Below are positions 8,964 to 15,728 of a stretch of 24,792 nucleotides of DNA, one piece after another. The notes below the pieces were generated by a model. That model was not told the origin of the DNA. It worked only from the letters and a program-made list of their open reading frames with translations, and searched no databases. The translations under genes and the position numbers were made by a program. The stretch lies in assembly GCF_006345805.1 (NCBI RefSeq), contig NW_021836457.1:1-24792 (forward strand), written 5' to 3'. The stretch is from Octopus sinensis. Its lineage: Eukaryota. Every line of letters starts with the position of its first letter. Position 1 is the first letter of the stretch.

Positions 8964-9045
8964 ATTAATATACACACATACAGCACAAGTGTGTATTGCG
9001 GTATTTTCGTGTTTCTACAACTTCCGCCTTCCTACATCATTCTAT

Positions 9046-9128
9046 AACAACAACAACAACAGCAACAACAACAACAACAACAACAACACAACAACAACAA
9101 CAACAACAACAACAACAGTAACAAAAAC

Positions 9129-9183
<55 letters not shown>
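9046..9183. repeat. (AAC)n followed by (AAT)n microsatellite
   Basis: Direct reading; AAT begins at 9129. Confidence 0.97.
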
Positions 9184-9612
9184 GAAATGCAAAGATCCTA
9201 TGGGATTTTATGATTCATGAGATAGAGACTAGGAAGCTAGACATAGTCTTAATTGAGAAAGAAAACAAACTATGCTGGATCATAGCTATAGAATGCCCAG
9301 CTGACAACAAGGTATGCAGTAAGGAAGAAAGAAAAGTTGAGAAATATGACAGGTTAGCTTGGGAAGTTAAGCGGTTGTGGTCGATGAAAAAAGTAGCAGT
9401 AGTATCAATAATTGACAGAGCCCTGGGAACAGTGAACAAAAATCTCGAGAAGTATGTGGAACAAATAGAGGCTGCAATTAGGGTGGAACACTGCTTGGAA
9501 CCGCTCGACTACTCCGGAAGGTGCTCGAAAAATAAGAGGTGTTACCTTAGTTCACTGGTAGTGAACAGCTTACGCCGTAGTACATCTCAAGCGTTAGAAG
9601 CCGTGCAAAGGC
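9184..9612 (+). pseudogene. 5'-truncated R4/Dong-like non-LTR retrotransposon (RLE domain plus 3' UTR) inside (AAT)n
   Basis: NAKILWDFMIHEIETRKLDIVLIEK..CWIIAIECPAD..KEERKVEKYDRLAWEVKRLW..ALG, then a shifted frame from 9491 LLGTARLLRKVLEK* (TAA 9533-9535); typical R4/Dong RLE C-terminus; AAT on both sides. Confidence 0.85.
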
Positions 9613-9670
<58 letters not shown>

Positions 9671-9671
<1 letters not shown>

Positions 9672-9968
9672 GGGATTCTTTGGGGTTTGAATAATTCACC
9701 TTTGGAAACATGGGTGTTTCATTCAACATCCTTAAACAACCCTTAATCAGGGACCTTTTGAGCGGGATAGGTTACCCGACCAGAAGAAAATTCTAACTGG
9801 GCCCCACCCGCAAGGTCATGCGCTGTTTATCTTGGTATGAGATCACCATGTCGCGCACATATGGTTGTGATGCATGTGCCTTATCAGACGAGTAGTCATG
9901 ACGGGTATACTGGGTTTCGTATATTTTAACCCAGTGTCACTTTGATGGCATGCACTGCTCTCTCACTC
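9671..9968 (+). mobile_element. Element D copy 1 (3' part), bounded by (AAT)n
   Basis: Matches 10277-10552; ends ctctcactc|aataat. Confidence 0.85.
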
Positions 9969-10027
<59 letters not shown>

Positions 10028-10029
<2 letters not shown>

Positions 10030-10552
10030 GCCCTGATGCAGTACCAGGCAGTGGCTCTCATGGCTTCTGATCTTAACTGATTGGAAGTGTTATCATGTAC
10101 ATTGTTTTGTCTTGGTGTAAAAATGGGCTACAGCAAATATTCTGCTCAATACCACAGATTTGCTTGTCAGTTGTTTGACCTAACCAGTTGAGCATGTCCC
10201 TTAGTGGCTGACGATATGTGCATCTCTGATCACGATCAGAAGTATGGGGGAGCATCATAGCCATGTGTTGAGAAGGATTCTTTGGGGTTTGAATAATTCA
10301 CCTCTGGAAACATGGGTGTTTCGTTCACGTCCTTTTGAGCGGGATGGGTTACTCGATCTGAAGAAAATTCTAACTGGGCTCCACCTGCAAGGTCTGTGCT
10401 GTTTTCTCTTGATATGAGATCACCATGTCGCGCACATATGGTTGTGATGCATGTGCCTGGTGTACCCTTATCAGACGGGTAGTCATGACGGGTATACTGG
10501 GCTTCGTATATTTTACTCCGTGTCACTTTGATGGCATGCACTGCTCTCACTC
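10028..10552 (+). mobile_element. Element D copy 2 (longest), bounded by (AAT)n
   Basis: Same 3' end as D1 and D3; no tRNA-like A/B box and no recognisable protein motif. Confidence 0.85.
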
Positions 10553-10562
10553 AATAATAATA

Positions 10563-10630
<68 letters not shown>

Positions 10631-10633
<3 letters not shown>

Positions 10634-10735
10634 TGCCTGGTGTACCCTTATCAGACGGGTAGTCATGATGGGTATACTGGGCTTCGTATATTTTACCCCA
10701 GTGTCACTTTGATGGCATGCTCTGCTCGCTCACTC
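10631..10735 (+). mobile_element. Element D copy 3 (last about 100 bp), bounded by (AAT)n
   Basis: Matches 10451-10552; ends cactc|aataat; AAT continues to about 10835. Confidence 0.85.
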
Positions 10736-10770
<35 letters not shown>

Positions 10771-10789
10771 TGATAATAATAATGATAAT

Positions 10790-10835
<46 letters not shown>

Positions 10836-10837
10836 TA

Positions 10838-10870
10838 CAGGTTGGCCAAAAGTCCCCGGACAGTAAATCA
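10838..10870 (+). mobile_element. Possible solitary Tc1/mariner-type terminal inverted repeat
   Basis: TA|CAGGTTGGCCAAAAGTC resembles CAGGG/TGGCCAAAAGT-type TIR starts; no partner TIR found in the window. Confidence 0.3.
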
Positions 10871-11261
10871 AAATTCCATAAATACTATCTGTAATTCTGT
10901 ATTGACTTGGAAAAATGTGTCACTGAAGGAAGACTTCATTTTGAACAATTTTCATGATTTTTCATATTTAGATGCTTTTCATTAAATCCATTCAGTTGTT
11001 AAAACATAAATAAATCTTGGAATCAAAAATGGTTTTGATTTACTGATCAGGTGACTTTTGTAAAAAATGAACTAATTTGAACTTTGCTGATAGTCGCACA
11101 CATTCTTCACAGGGAATTTGAAAGAGGATTTCATTAATGGTTTTTTTTTTTAAACTGAAATCATCAGTGATAATATTTATTATGTATCTATCTGTTCAAA
11201 TTTTTCGGATATGGTGGCGTTCTTACATATCATCTACGAGTTGTCGGTCTATTTCTTGATA

Positions 11262-12110
11262 CTTCCTTCCTTCCTTCTTTATTTCCTTAATTCTTTCTTT
11301 TCATCCTTCATTCTTCCTTCTTTCTTACTCCCCTCCCTCATTCCTTCCTTCCTTCCTTCCTTATTTCCTTCCCTCATTCATTCTTTTTTCCTTTCTTTCT
11401 TCCTTTCTTCCTTTCTTCCTTTCTTCCTTCTTTCCTTCTTTCCTTACTTCCTTACTTCCTTCCTTCCTTCCTTCCTTCTTGTCTTTCCTTCCTTCCTTTT
11501 TTCTTTCCTCCTCCCTCCATCATTCGTTCGTTCGTTCGTTCCTCCCTTCCTTCCTTCCTCCCTCCCTCCTTCCCTCCCTCCTCCCTCCCTCCCTCCCTCC
11601 CTCCCTCCCTCCATTCCTTCCTTTCTTCCTTCCTTCCTTCTTCCTTCCTTCTTCCTTCCTTCCTTCCTTCCTTCTTCTCCCTCCCTCCTCCATTCCTTCA
11701 TTCTTCCTTCCTTCCTTCCTTCCTTCCTTCCTTCCTCCTCCCCCTCCCCTCCATTCCTTCCTTCCTTCCTTCCTTCCTTCCTTCCTTCCTCCCTCCCCCC
11801 TCCTCCCTCCCTCCCTCCCTCCCTCCCTTCCTTCCTTCCTCTTCCTCCTCCCTCCTTCCTTCCTTCCTCCTTCCTCCTCCCTCCCTCCCTCCCTCCTTCC
11901 TTCCTTCCTCTTTCCCTTCCTTCCTTCCTCTTTCTTCCTTCCTTCCTTCCTTCCTTCCTTCCTTCCTTCCCTCCTCACTCCCTCCCTCCATTCCTTCCTT
12001 CCTTCTTTCCTTCCTTCCCTACACCCCTCCCTCCCTCCCTCCCTCCCTCCCTTCCTTCCTCATTTCCTTGTCTTCTTCTTTCTTTCTCTTTTCTCTTTTT
12101 CTCTCTCCCT
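11262..12110. repeat. (CCTT)n/(CCCT)n polypyrimidine tract
   Basis: About 850 bp almost purely C/T on the plus strand; source of the LPSF and GRKE ORFs. Confidence 0.97.
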
Positions 12111-12368: not shown

Positions 12369-12833
12369 GCACGCACGCACGCACACACACACACACACAC
12401 ATACACACACGCCTGCACGCACGCACATACACACGTAAATACACACACAGACGCACACATACACACACTCATGCACGCACACATACACACGCACGCACGC
12501 ACACACACATACACGCATACGCACACACACAGACACACACACATACACACTCACGTGCACACACATACACACACACACGCACACATACACACACGCCTGC
12601 ACGCACGCACATACACACGTACATACACACACACGCACGCGAACATACACACACTCGCGCACGCACACATACACACGCACGCACGCACACACACATACAC
12701 GCATACGCACACACACATACACGCATACACACACACAGACACACAGACATACATGCTCACGCACGCACACATACATACACAAACGTACGCACACACATAC
12801 ACACACGCGCACTCACACACACACACACACACA
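12369..12833. repeat. Compound (CA)/(CACG)/(CATA) microsatellite with a higher-order unit of about 184 bp
   Basis: gcctgcacgcacgcacatacacacgta recurs at 12411 and 12595. Confidence 0.93.
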
Positions 12834-13197
12834 TTGGTCTGATTAAATTGTCAGTGAAGTAATAAAAAAATAATGTTTATCGCCACTTCAACATGGATGT
12901 CCCGCTACTGCCGTTTTTAACCCCAGGGGGACGCATCCTCCAGTTGGTCATCGATGCAATCTGCACCCAATATATATCGCAAGCAAGGGAACTAACCATT
13001 ACCATCTTCGACGGAGTAAAATTTTTTCGGTTTTCTTTGGGTGAGACTTTGCACGGTCATATGAAGAGCACAGAGAACGGTTTCACAATTTCAGATTGTT
13101 GCGTATTGGTGTCAGTTTAGCTAGAATTGATCGAGGAATTGCAAGTCGCAATGAGCAAAGAGAGAGAGAGAGAAAAAAAATTGGAATCGTTGATATA

Positions 13198-13388
13198 GGC
13201 GTAGGAGTGGCTGTGTGGTAAGTAGTTTGCTTACCAACCACATGGTTCCGGGTTCAGTCCCACTGCGTGGCACCTTTGGCAAGTGTCTTCTACTATAGCC
13301 TCAGGCCGACCAAAGCCTTGTGAGTGGATTTGGTAGACAGAAACTGAAAGAAGCCCGTCGTATATATGCACATATATATATATATATG

Positions 13389-13471
<83 letters not shown>

Positions 13472-13680
13472 TGCATGTGTGTATGTGTTTTTCCAGCCAA
13501 CATCGCTTGACAACCGATGCTAGTCTGTTTACGTCCACATAACTTAGCGGTTCGGCTAAAGAGACCGATAGAATAAGTACTAGACTTACAAAGAATAAGT
13601 CCGGAGGTCGATTTGCTCGACTAAAGGCAGTGCTCCAGCATGGCCGCAGTCAAATGAAACAAGCAAAAGAGTAAAAGAGT
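13198..13680 (+). mobile_element. SINE A, tandem unit 1
   Basis: A-box-like TGGCTGTGTGG, B-box-like GGTTCAGTCCC, CORE-like CACCTTTGGCAAGT, central (TA)n, (AAAAGAGT) tail. Confidence 0.93.
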
Positions 13681-13685
13681 AACCA

Positions 13686-13874
13686 GGCGCAGGTGTGGCT
13701 GTGTGGTAAGAACTTTGCTTCCCAACTACATGGTTTCGGGTTCAGTCCCACTTCGTGGCACCTTGGGAAAATGTCTTCTATTATAGCCCCGGCCGACCAA
13801 AGCCTTGTGAGTGGATTGGTAGACAGAAACTGAAAGAAGCCCGTCGTATATATGCACATATATATATATATATG

Positions 13875-13948
<74 letters not shown>

Positions 13949-14168
13949 ATATATATGCATGCATGTGTGTATGTGTTTTTCCAGCCAACATCGCTTGACA
14001 ACCGATGCTAGTCTGTTTACGTCCACATAACTTAGCGGTTCGGCTAAAGAGACCGATAGAATAAGTACTAGACTTACAAAGAATAAGTCCGGAGGTCGAT
14101 TTGCTCGACTAAAGGCAGTGCTCCAGCATGGCCGCAGTCAAATGAAACAAGCAAAAGAGTAAAAGAGT
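13686..14168 (+). mobile_element. SINE A, tandem unit 2 (recombinant of units 3 and 1)
   Basis: Head diagnostic bases as unit 3; body and tail as unit 1. Confidence 0.93.
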
Positions 14169-14173
14169 AACCA

Positions 14174-14670
14174 GGCGCAGGTGTGGCTGTGTGGTAAGAA
14201 CTTTGCTTCCCAACTACATGGTTTCGGGTTCAGTCCCACTTCGTGGCACCTTGGGAAAATGTCTTCTATTATAGCCCCGGGCCGACCAAAGCCTTGTGAG
14301 TGGATTTGGTAGACGGAAACTGAAAGAAGCCCGTACACACACACACACACACATACACACACACATATATATATATACATATATATATGTATGTGTATAT
14401 GTATGTATATATGTATGTATGTATGTATATATATGTAACTATATTTAGGCGTGTGTTCCTTTGTGTCTGTGTTTGTTCCTCCACCATCGCTTGACAACCG
14501 GTGTTAGTATGTTTGACGTCCTCGTAACTTAACTCGGTTCAGCAAAAGAGACCGATAGAATAAGTACTAGGCTTTCAAAGAATAAATCTTGGGATCGATT
14601 TCTTCGACTAAAGCCCTACAAGGCGTTGCTCCAGCATGGCCGCAGTCAAATGGCTGAGACAAGTAAAAGA
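14174..14670 (+). mobile_element. SINE A, tandem unit 3
   Basis: Complete A structure with CA/TA/TATG centre; gtaaaaga(g/t)taacca on both sides is a possible TSD. Confidence 0.92.
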
Positions 14671-14900: not shown

Positions 14901-15689
14901 GCGCGCGCACATATATGTATAACCCCTCCACACGCACAGACATACACAAACACATACACAGACACACAGACAGAGATACAGGCACACATAGAGACCGACA
15001 GACACAGACACACACAGACACACACACAGACACATACAGATACACACACACACGCAGACACACATACACACACAGATACACACACACACAGATACACACG
15101 CGCATACTCACAGATACAAATGCGCACGCACACGCACAGATACACACGCGCACACACACAGACACACACACACATACGCACACATACACACACGCACACA
15201 CACGCACACACGCACGCAACACACACAGACGCAGAACACACACAGATACACACAGACACATACACAGACACACAGACAGAGATACAGACATACATAGAAA
15301 TCCACAGACACAGACACACACAAATACACACATGCAGATACACACAGACACACACAAAAAACAGACAGACACACAGACACACACAACACAGATACACAGA
15401 CACACACACACACGCAGACACACAGATACACACACAGACACACACAAACACACATATACAGATACACACAGACACACACAAAAACAGACAGACACACACA
15501 GACACACTCAACACAGATACACAGACACACACAGATACACACACACACGCTGACACACATACACACACACACATACAATCACGCATACACACAAGCACGC
15601 ACACACACTCACACTCACAAATACATACACGCACGCAGACACACAGATGCACACACACACGCACACTCACAGATACACACACACACACA

Positions 15690-15728
<39 letters not shown>
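14901..15728. repeat. Compound (CA)/(CAGA)/(CAGATA) microsatellite field
   Basis: Direct reading; explains the HT/CV-rich ORFs. Confidence 0.96.

What the first reader, a model, noticed from the sequence alone, without database searches (positions are those of the whole stretch)
9046..10836. (AAT)n microsatellite colonised by four same-orientation retro-insertions: candidate microsatellite-targeting system
Seen: AAT-[Dong-like fragment]-AAT-[D1]-AAT-[D2]-AAT-[D3]-AAT. All are on the plus strand, all end precisely at C|AATAAT, 5' ends are variable, and there is no unique spacer DNA. Established: Dong elements (R4 clade, RLE) are sequence-specific for TAA repeats, and 3'-coterminal, 5'-truncated copies are the signature of target-primed reverse transcription. 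Inference: an autonomous Dong-like enzyme and a non-coding passenger share the target, and each insertion regenerates AAT on both sides, so arrays grow.
Basis: partly seen in the sequence, partly recalled or inferred. Interest (0 to 1): 0.78.

Follow-up and report, generated by a model that had tools for sequence, protein, structure and literature searches.

The report
Dong-type retrotransposons nested in AAT microsatellite
An (AAT)n microsatellite in an octopus-type genome holds one dead fragment of a Dong/R4-type retrotransposon and three copies of a ~555-base non-coding retroposon. This is a clear but ordinary case of a targeting habit known since 1993-2004.

Summary
Positions 9129-10835 read AAT-[F1]-AAT-[D1]-AAT-[D2]-AAT-[D3]-AAT, all on the + strand, with only AAT repeats between the elements.

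F1 (9184-9612) is the dead, 5'-truncated end of a non-LTR retrotransposon that carries a restriction-like endonuclease (RLE). Full-length relatives have a reverse transcriptase, a CCHC zinc knuckle and a C-terminal RLE, but no AP endonuclease. Their best solved-structure match is R2.

In 30 metagenome loci these relatives end in sense-strand (AAT)n. Several have AAT on both sides or sit head-to-tail with AAT between them. That is the published Dong/R4 hallmark, including in molluscs, and Dong-R4 is already reported as abundant in Octopus.

D1-D3 are copies of one non-coding element. D2 is full length: an Octopus bimaculoides copy has the same 5' end and AAT-type repeats on both flanks. Different truncation points and indels argue for independent insertions, not local duplication.

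Still only inferred: that the Dong enzyme mobilises D. D's 3' end is not significantly similar to F1's 3'UTR.

Verdict: real, well explained, and a new member of a known kind. Low-to-moderate interest.

The parts
9046..9130 (+). (AAC)n microsatellite of about 28 units, running directly into the first AAT tract. Probably the decayed 5' part of the original A-rich trinucleotide microsatellite.
   Evidence: TRF, 87% matches; sequence. Similar AAC/AAT mixtures lie upstream of Dong-like copies in L017 and L021.
9129..9183 (+). (AAT)18, pure. The 5' flank of F1.
   Evidence: TRF, 100% matches.
9184..9612 (+). F1: a dead, 5'-truncated copy of a Dong/R4-type RLE non-LTR retrotransposon. The coding remnant runs from 9186 to the stop codon at 9533-9535. 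It matches residues ~1000-1119 of the 1122-aa relative P0017, i.e. the RLE domain. A deletion with frameshift lies near 9491. The 3'UTR is 9536-9612 (77 nt).
   Evidence: 63% amino-acid identity to P0001 and P0002. tblastn with the full-length relative P0017. Alignment A3 shows two changes in F1 relative to its relatives: PD is LD, and IID is IIA. Frame analysis. A profile of relatives matches R2 through RT, CCHC and RLE with E = 1.5e-75.
9613..9671 (+). (AAT)19.7, pure. The tail of F1 and the 5' flank of D1.
   Evidence: TRF.
9672..9968 (+). D1: a 5'-truncated copy (297 nt, roughly the 3' half) of the ~555-nt non-coding D retroposon. It has a 10-nt deletion that removes the 5' arm of the D hairpin.
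   Evidence: Alignments A1 and A5. 90.7% identity to D2 and 89.9% to the O. bimaculoides copy in ungapped columns.
9969..10027 (+). (AAT)19.7, pure. The tail of D1 and the 5' flank of D2.
   Evidence: TRF.
10028..10552 (+). D2: a full-length D copy of 525 nt, carrying a 25-nt internal deletion relative to D1 and the O. bimaculoides copy. Its 5' end is ATGCCCTGATGCAG.
   Evidence: Same 5' terminus as L033:70546. All six reading frames hold several stop codons; the longest ORF is 104 aa on the - strand. No tRNA or Rfam match.
10553..10632 (+). (AAT)27, 97% matches. The tail of D2 and the 5' flank of D3.
   Evidence: TRF.
10633..10735 (+). D3: a severely 5'-truncated D copy (the last 103 nt). It starts at the base of a predicted 13-bp hairpin.
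   Evidence: Alignment A5. 95.1% identity to D2 and 93.7% to D1. Predicted fold.
10736..10835 (+). (AAT)33, impure, with GAT and ATT variants. The tail of D3 and/or the old 3' remainder of the original microsatellite. It is followed by unique DNA.
   Evidence: TRF, 93% matches; sequence. The solo D copy in L033 has a similar GAT-containing AAT tract downstream.

Best explanation
The region is an A-rich trinucleotide microsatellite, (AAC)n(AAT)n, in an octopus-type genome. Retroelements that end in (AAT)n have inserted into it repeatedly.

F1 is a copy of a Dong/R4-type LINE that was already 5'-truncated on arrival. This type has a single ORF: N-terminal DNA-binding region, reverse transcriptase, CCHC knuckle and C-terminal restriction-like endonuclease.

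Proposed mechanism, inferred by analogy with R2 and Dong:
- The element's protein recognises and nicks (TAA/TTA)n DNA.
- The freed 3' end primes reverse transcription on an RNA whose 3' end is (AAU)n.
- Synthesis often stops early, which gives copies with a common 3' end and variable 5' truncation.
- Because the break lies inside the repeat, every new copy has AAT on both sides. Those tracts are targets for the next insertion, so same-orientation arrays without spacer DNA build up.

D1, D2 and D3 are three independent insertions of a ~555-nt non-coding, non-tRNA retroposon with its own (AAT)n tail. They most likely borrow a Dong-type enzyme in trans; this step is inferred and I put it at about 0.6.

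Shown here: the anatomy, the identity of F1, the clade-wide AAT association, the full length of D, and the independence of the D copies.
Inferred: the enzyme's cleavage specificity and the dependence of D on it.
For: F1 identity:
- The 143-codon remnant is 63% identical to P0001 and P0002.
- An exhaustive HMMER search finds 10,184 relatives.
- All 19 full-length relatives tested have RVT_1, 18 of 19 have zf-RVT, and none has an AP-endonuclease or an N-terminal zinc-finger domain.
- Their profile matches solved R2 proteins (9nl3, 9dou, 9nl2, 8gh6) from RT through CCHC into the RLE, pairing kPDLIFV..ALVVDV with rrPDivvvdk..aliidv, at E = 1.5e-75.

Targeting in relatives:
- Of the 3' ends I could judge, most run from an ~80-180-nt UTR straight into sense-strand (AAT) of at least 4 units: L001 copy B, L003-L009, L011, L017, L019, L026.
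- 26 of 29 AAT runs in L001-L032 lie on the + strand, to which each locus's matched copy was oriented.
- The one full-length copy with both ends in its contig (L006) has (AAT)11 upstream and (AAT)12 downstream. The next copy's 5' end starts right after that.
- L014, L021, L026 and the second copy in L007 have AAT directly 5' of truncated copies.
- L007, L017 and L019 are head-to-tail arrays with AAT between copies, sometimes of different families.

Literature:
- Dong targets (TAA)n in Bombyx, Anopheles and the snail Biomphalaria (PMC3812793).
- R4/Dong has RT plus REL-endonuclease, no N-terminal zinc fingers, and a (TAA)n target in insects, molluscs and cnidarians (PMC7998251).
- Dong transcripts are cut from upstream TAA repeats by a 5' ribozyme (PMC3774820).
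- Octopus has full-length and recently active Dong-R4 families (PMC9115989, PMC13282606).

D family:
- The four copies agree on the 3' end. D2 and the O. bimaculoides copy (L033:70546-71101) also agree on the 5' end.
- The solo copy has GAAATAATAAT on its 5' side and (AAT)11GATAATAATGATG on its 3' side.
- D1, D2 and D3 have different 5' ends and different indels (25 nt, 10 nt).
- In several diagnostic positions D1 matches the unlinked copy rather than D2.
Against: - D's last 103 nt are not significantly similar to F1's 3'UTR (local alignment p = 0.07 against D3, 0.34 against full D2). The usual LINE-SINE shared-tail evidence is therefore missing for this pair.
- F1's own lineage was not found in octopus databases. 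Its closest relatives are only 63% identical and come from unidentified metagenome hosts.
- Assignment to R4/Dong rather than another RLE clade rests on architecture and target, not on an RT phylogeny.
- No HDV-like 5' ribozyme was detected.
- The window copies are slightly closer to each other (91-95%) than to the L033 copy (87-93%). This could reflect a species difference, gene conversion or some local history.
- Only 4 D copies could be examined.
- Some relatives have no AAT at their ends (L002, L025, L028).
Confidence: 0.8

Rival explanations
1. Tail-annealing only, with no enzyme-level microsatellite specificity. The AAT tracts would simply be the elements' own 3' tails. D, and possibly F1, would be mobilised by a LINE with ordinary A/T-rich nicking, such as an AP-endonuclease RTE-type element with a microsatellite tail. 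Clustering would arise because an (AAU)n RNA tail anneals best to nicks made inside existing (ATT)n/(AAT)n tails.
For: - Octopus RTE elements end in a microsatellite (PMC9115989), and RTE tails seed microsatellite families in Lepidoptera (PMC2887409).
- D's 3' end shows no significant similarity to F1's 3'UTR.
- AAT tracts attract other elements too. In L003 an unrelated tRNA-like SINE sits in reverse orientation at the edge of the AAT tail, with a ~15-bp target-site duplication.
- The common octopus SINE carries (ATT)n tails.
Against: - For the F1 clade, AAT also lies at the 5' side of full-length and truncated copies in many unrelated hosts, always on the sense strand.
- These proteins have an RLE and no AP endonuclease.
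- Dong's (TAA)n specificity is published (PMC3812793, PMC7998251).
- The solo D copy has AAT-type repeats on both sides and no other visible target-site duplication.
Confidence: 0.2
2. One event rather than four. A single TPRT reaction would have produced a concatemer because the reverse transcriptase jumped from the end of one template to the (AAU)n tail of another RNA. End-to-end template jumping is a property I recall for R2 reverse transcriptase; I did not look this up. Some or all of F1-D1-D2-D3 would then have arrived together.
For: - All units have the same orientation, only tail repeats lie between them, and three of the four are 5'-truncated.
- The three internal pure tracts are nearly the same length: 55, 59 and 59 nt.
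Against: - D2 is full length.
- The tracts differ in purity (100% versus 93-97%), which suggests different ages.
- Similar arrays in other hosts mix full-length copies (L006).
- Nothing in the data requires a single event.
Confidence: 0.1
3. Local tandem duplication or unequal crossing-over between AAT tracts made the D copies from one original insertion.
For: The window copies are 91-95% identical to each other, slightly more than to the unlinked L033 copy at 87-93%.
Against: - Unequal exchange between AAT tracts would copy whole units with identical 5' ends. Here the 5' ends differ, with lengths of 525, 297 and 103 nt.
- Each copy has private indels: a 25-nt deletion in D2 only and a 10-nt deletion in D1 only.
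- D1 shares several diagnostic bases with the unlinked copy rather than with D2.
- F1 is a different element altogether.
Confidence: 0.03

Closest known systems
Dong (Bombyx mori, Xiong & Eickbush 1993) and Dong-like elements DongAg and DongBg (Kojima & Fujiwara 2004); R4/Dong clade
   Same: - Single-ORF LINE with RT, CCHC and a C-terminal restriction-like endonuclease; no AP endonuclease and no N-terminal zinc fingers.
- Inserts in (TAA)n with the repeat on both sides.
- Present in molluscs.
Sources: PMC3812793, PMC7998251, PMC3774820. Here.
   Different: - F1 is only the last ~430 nt of a dead copy.
- Its lineage is only 63% identical to the nearest database proteins.
- Clade assignment by RT phylogeny was not done.
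- The 5' ribozyme known for Dong was not detected in relatives.
Octopus Dong-R4 families (Albertin 2015 repeat library; Petrosino 2022, PMC9115989; O. vulgaris annotation 2026, PMC13282606)
   Same: Same host group and same LINE class. They are reported as full-length and as the largest recently active LINE group, with 5 families and 1,129 insertions.
   Different: Those papers, as far as I read them, do not describe AAT arrays or a non-coding partner.
R2 and its non-autonomous SIDEs (short internally deleted elements)
   Same: - RLE-type, sequence-specific TPRT that produces copies with a common 3' end and 5' truncation.
- Non-autonomous derivatives use the same target.
- R2 is the best structural match of the F1 family.
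   Different: - R2 targets 28S rDNA and has N-terminal zinc fingers.
- SIDEs keep the parent's 5' ribozyme and 3'UTR. D shows neither relative to F1. What I say about SIDEs is from memory.
Microsatellite-associated RTE and SINE families (for example lepidopteran RTE tails, PMC2887409); Kibi, Koshi, Mino and Waldo microsatellite-specific LINEs (PMC3812793)
   Same: Retroelements whose tails are microsatellites, or whose targets are. They create families of microsatellites with shared flanks.
   Different: Those are AP-endonuclease elements with other repeat motifs. Here the coding partner is RLE-type and the motif is AAT.

Membership tests
R4/Dong clade non-LTR retrotransposon (for F1) | Single ORF with a central RT, a CCHC motif and a C-terminal restriction-like (PD..D..K) endonuclease; no AP endonuclease | tested here: met
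   - 19 of 19 full-length relatives have RVT_1, 18 of 19 have zf-RVT, and none has Exo_endo_phos.
- Their profile aligns to R2 through the RLE at E = 1.5e-75.
- F1 itself covers only the RLE part, and both motif residues are mutated.
R4/Dong clade non-LTR retrotransposon (for F1) | Insertion into (TAA)n, with the repeat on both sides of the element | tested here: met
   - The window has AAT on both sides of F1.
- Relatives: L006 is full length between (AAT)11 and (AAT)12.
- L014, L021, L026 and L007 have AAT at truncated 5' ends.
- Most of the 3' ends I could judge run into sense-strand AAT.
R4/Dong clade non-LTR retrotransposon (for F1) | N-terminus without zinc fingers but with a divergent Myb/SANT-like domain (PMC7998251) | tested here: inconclusive
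   No zinc-finger family hit at the N-terminus in 19 of 19 relatives, but also no Myb hit with hmmscan. The paper needed HHpred to see it.
R4/Dong clade non-LTR retrotransposon (for F1) | RT phylogeny groups with R4 and Dong rather than R2, NeSL, HERO or CRE | not tested
   No reference R4 or Dong sequence is available in the tools. Only R2 proteins are in the PDB set.
R4/Dong clade non-LTR retrotransposon (for F1) | HDV-like self-cleaving ribozyme at the 5' end (PMC3774820) | tested here: inconclusive
   Rfam finds nothing in 8 loci with 5' ends. My own crude descriptor finds nothing either, and it also hits 65% of shuffled sequences, so it is uninformative. F1 lacks its 5' end.
SINE in the strict sense (for D) | Head derived from a pol III gene (tRNA, 5S or 7SL) | tested here: not met
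   ARAGORN finds no tRNA in the window. Rfam finds nothing at gathering threshold or at a relaxed threshold over 9000-10900, apart from AAT artefacts.
SINE in the strict sense (for D) | 3' end shared with the partner LINE | tested here: inconclusive
   Against F1's 3'UTR: p = 0.07 for D3 and 0.34 for D2. Only the (AAT)n tail is shared. Other octopus Dong-R4 families could not be fetched.
Non-autonomous TPRT retroposon (for D) | Defined full-length 5' end, common 3' end, variable 5' truncation, simple-repeat tail, no coding capacity | tested here: met
   - D2 and L033:70546 share the 5' end.
- All four copies share the 3' end followed by AAT.
- Lengths are ~555, 525, 297 and 103 nt.
- All six reading frames hold several stop codons.
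SIDE-like deletion derivative of an RLE LINE (for D) | 5' and 3' ends derived from the parent LINE | not testable with these tools
   No full-length octopus Dong-R4 sequence was reachable. There is no significant similarity to F1's 3'UTR.

The most novel reading that the evidence does not exclude
D is a dedicated non-coding parasite of Dong/R4-type enzymes. It would be recognised through little more than its (AAU)n tail, perhaps together with its 13-bp hairpin ~100 nt from the 3' end. It would have no pol III-derived head and no 3'UTR borrowed from a LINE. Dong and D together would then be a self-reinforcing generator of AAT microsatellite arrays in octopus genomes. I know of no described partner of this kind for the R4/Dong clade, but I could not check Repbase or Dfam.
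Probability: 0.3. Interest if true: 0.45.

Novelty: new member of a known kind. Interest (0 to 1): 0.25.

Why it matters
- It is a clean, compact illustration of how microsatellite-specific retrotransposons split and multiply their own target.
- It shows that AAT tracts in octopus genomes are partly made by transposable elements, which matters for repeat annotation and for designing microsatellite markers.
- The D family also feeds an AAT-encoded poly-Asn exon into a predicted O. bimaculoides PP2A-B55 isoform. That is a warning for gene models.
- If D depends on Dong enzymes through its tail alone, it would give a handle on template choice by RLE-type reverse transcriptases. These are of current interest because R2-type enzymes are being developed for site-specific insertion (my own knowledge).

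Tried and rejected
- **Pfam and PDB on short queries.** Pfam on the F1 peptide and PDB with the 219-aa P0002 gave nothing useful. Full-length relatives and a profile were needed.
- **DNA scans for D.** Exact-pattern scans for a conserved D 24-mer found 0 hits in JGI metagenomes, GTDB genomes and IMG/VR.
- **Exact look-ups.** The two window ORFs are not on record.
- **Octopus transcriptome.** D words were absent from the stored part of the O. vulgaris transcriptome supplement, and no Dong consensus sequence is held there.
- **Six-frame D2 search.** It gave no LINE-like protein, only an exonised D copy in an O. bimaculoides gene model. That hit did give 85.7 kb of octopus genome.
- **Orthologues for an empty-site test.** The PP2A-B55 search returned no other Octopus species, so the test could not be run.
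- **RNA families.** Rfam found nothing real in the window or at the 5' ends of relatives. The CrcZ matches are AAT artefacts.
- **Ribozyme descriptor.** My home-made HDV-like descriptor is uninformative, because 131 of 200 shuffles also hit.
- **Conserved 3'UTR hairpin.** By eye several relatives have a short hairpin at or after the stop codon. The folds are not comparable enough to claim conservation or a match to D.
- **Large alignment.** The search for related loci with the 17-sequence alignment failed for lack of a conserved stretch. A 5-sequence alignment worked.
Full report
**1. Observation**

The sequence between 9046 and 10835 is laid out as follows:
- (AAC)n at 9046-9130
- (AAT)18 at 9129-9183
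- a 429-nt block, F1, at 9184-9612
- (AAT)19.7 at 9613-9671
- D1 at 9672-9968
- (AAT)19.7 at 9969-10027
- D2 at 10028-10552
- (AAT)27 at 10553-10632
- D3 at 10633-10735
- (AAT)33, impure, at 10736-10835

Unique DNA follows. D1, D2 and D3 align to one another, share the same 3' end and start at different points. Every element ends in C followed by AAT, and nothing but AAT separates the elements. The window holds no other copy of F1 or D and no other AAT run of at least 5 units. By comparison, an 85.7-kb octopus locus has about one such run per 7.8 kb, spread over both strands. Five same-strand runs within 1.7 kb are therefore not chance.

**2. What F1 is**

Read in frame from 9186, F1 encodes 143 codons that are 63% identical to two database proteins, P0001 and P0002.

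An exhaustive HMMER search with P0002 found 10,184 relatives. In full-length proteins of 1100-1300 aa this domain sits at the extreme C-terminus. All 19 full-length relatives examined have a central RVT_1 domain, and 18 have the zf-RVT knuckle. None has an AP-endonuclease domain or an N-terminal zinc finger.

A profile built from them matches solved R2 retrotransposon proteins at E = 1.5e-75. The alignment runs through the RT and the CCHC motif into the restriction-like endonuclease, pairing kPDLIFV..ALVVDV with rrPDivvvdk..aliidv. LINE-1 ORF2 proteins match the RT part only.

F1 is therefore the RLE-domain end plus the 3'UTR of an RLE-type non-LTR retrotransposon. The copy is dead:
- The conserved PD motif reads LD.
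- The conserved IID motif reads IIA.
- Three codons are missing.
- A deletion near 9491 shifts the frame.

The real stop codon is at 9533-9535 and the 3'UTR is 9536-9612.

**3. Is the family microsatellite-specific?**

I fetched 30 loci encoding relatives from metagenome contigs, plus two ENA loci.

*3' ends.* In most of the 3' ends I could judge, the 3'UTR (~80-180 nt) runs straight into sense-strand (AAT)n. These are L001 copy B, L003-L009, L011, L017, L019 and L026. L016, L020 and L027 show weaker, imperfect AAT traces. L002, L025 and L028 have none. Of the 29 AAT runs of at least 4 units in these loci, 26 lie on the + strand, to which each locus's matched copy was oriented.

*5' ends.*
- L006 holds a complete element between (AAT)11 and (AAT)12. 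After the 3' tract the element's 5' end (AGCGCCAGT..) starts again, so it is a head-to-tail tandem.
- L014, L021, L026, the second copy in L007 and copy A in L001 have AAT directly upstream of their 5'-truncated ends.
- L007, L017 and L019 are arrays of two copies with AAT between them, sometimes from different families.

This is exactly the window's pattern, seen in unrelated hosts.

*Published picture.*
- Dong targets (TAA)n in Bombyx, Anopheles and the snail Biomphalaria (PMC3812793).
- Dong RNA is cut out of a TAA-repeat co-transcript by a 5' ribozyme (PMC3774820).

I did not run an RT phylogeny, because no reference sequences were reachable. 'Dong/R4' therefore rests on architecture and target.

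**4. What D is**

All six reading frames of D2 hold several stop codons. It has no tRNA or Rfam match and no similarity to the Dong-like proteins.

A six-frame search found one hit, an NCBI model of Octopus bimaculoides PP2A-B55 (P0153). In that model, the last ~170 nt of a D copy and its AAT tail are read as an exon with a poly-Asn run.

The encoding locus, L033 (GCA_001194135.2, 85.7 kb), holds that D copy at 70546-71101. It starts with the same ATGCCCTGATGCAG as D2. It contains both the 25-nt block missing from D2 and the 10-nt block missing from D1. It ends in ..CTCACTC followed by (AAT)11. Its flanks are ..GATGATATAAAGAAATAATAAT on the 5' side and GATAATAATGATG.. after the tail. It therefore sits in a short, imperfect AAT/GAT tract with no other target-site duplication.

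So D is a ~555-nt non-autonomous retroposon with a defined 5' end. D2 is full length, and D1 (297 nt) and D3 (103 nt) are truncated. The hit also places the window in Octopus or a close relative. Other window repeats match L033 at 85-90%.

**5. Independent insertions or local duplication?**

Ungapped identities are as follows:

| Pair | Identity |
|---|---|
| D1-D2 | 90.7% |
| D2-D3 | 95.1% |
| D1-D3 | 93.7% |
| D copies to the unlinked L033 copy | 87.0-93.3% |

The three copies have different 5' ends and private indels. D1 shares several diagnostic bases with the unlinked copy rather than with D2. Unequal exchange between AAT tracts would copy whole units with identical 5' ends, so local duplication is very unlikely. 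A single-event concatemer made by template jumping cannot be excluded from one locus.

**6. Does D use the Dong enzyme?**

For:
- The tail motif is the same and lies on the same strand.
- All four copies have AAT on both sides.
- D shares this array with a Dong copy.
- The copies have a common 3' end and are 5'-truncated to different extents.
- Dong-R4 is the largest recently active LINE group in O. vulgaris (PMC13282606).

Against or missing:
- D's 3' end is not significantly similar to F1's 3'UTR (p = 0.07 against D3, 0.34 against D2).
- No other octopus Dong family could be compared.
- Octopus RTE elements also end in a microsatellite (PMC9115989).
- The common octopus SINE carries (ATT)n tails on the opposite strand sense.
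- AAT tracts attract unrelated elements too (L003).

I put the partnership at about 0.6.

**7. Mechanism**

Shown here:
- The anatomy of the array.
- The identity of F1.
- The clade-wide presence of AAT at both ends.
- The full length of D and the independence of its copies.

Inferred from R2 and Dong biology:
- The protein binds and nicks the TAA repeat.
- The nick primes reverse transcription on an (AAU)n-ended RNA.
- Early termination produces 5' truncation.
- Each insertion leaves AAT on both sides, and those tracts serve as new targets.

**8. Novelty and verdict**

However, the system is the long-known Dong/R4 (TAA)n specificity, in a host where Dong-R4 is already reported as abundant. 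The possible new part is D as a non-coding, non-tRNA partner. That remains an inference from four copies. I rate it a new member of a known kind, with interest 0.25.

Noticed in passing
L033:70930-71165 (O. bimaculoides CM046622.1), protein P0153 residues ~93-165: The last ~170 nt of a D copy plus its (AAT)11 tail are read as a coding exon, with a poly-Asn run, in an NCBI PP2A-B55 regulatory-subunit isoform model. This is either exonisation of a transposable element or an annotation artefact.
   Followed up: partly
L033:45880-45990, 35540-35640, 74332-74400, 84170-84250: The common octopus tRNA-like SINE ends in ..gtggcaaaatttgaaaccatc followed by (ATC/ATT)n. It often lies head-to-tail with the next SINE. 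Many AAT/ATT runs in the octopus genome are therefore SINE tails of the opposite strand sense to the D and Dong tails.
   Followed up: partly
window 13197-14613: A tandem array of 2.9 copies of a 488-bp unit built from a tRNA-like SINE plus a (TA)n tract (TRF score 2206, 90% matches). This looks like a local tandem duplication of a SINE-containing unit.
   Followed up: no
L006:1-3824: A full-length Dong-like element lies between (AAT)11 and (AAT)12. The same 5' end starts again after the 3' tract, so this is a head-to-tail tandem of complete copies. Its 5'UTR carries four repeats of the motif CTAAGGGAG..AACCCTGACAGAAAA.
   Followed up: partly
L002:5170-11540: An inverted duplication. On both strands an internally deleted Dong-like copy (residues 386 to 905 missing) is followed ~110 nt later by the 5' end of another copy. 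Here the junction is AAGAACACAACAAT rather than an AAT run.
   Followed up: no
L003:2960-3352: An unrelated tRNA-derived SINE sits in reverse orientation at the edge of a Dong-like AAT tail, with a ~15-bp target-site duplication (AATAATAATAACTAGT). AAT tails are also hit by AP-endonuclease-type elements.
   Followed up: no
window 10636-10681 (D3), 10456-10501 (D2); absent in D1: D carries a predicted 13-bp hairpin (GCCTGGTGTACCC ... GGGTATACTGGGC) about 100 nt from its 3' end. D3 starts at its base, and D1 has lost the 5' arm through a 10-nt deletion. Its function is unknown.
   Followed up: partly
window 11262-12060, 12370-12833, 14929-15726 and others: The window is unusually rich in long microsatellites: (CTTC)n of ~800 bp, (CA)n-type tracts of ~460 and ~800 bp, and several (TCTA)n, (TATG)n and (TGTA)n tracts.
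   Followed up: no
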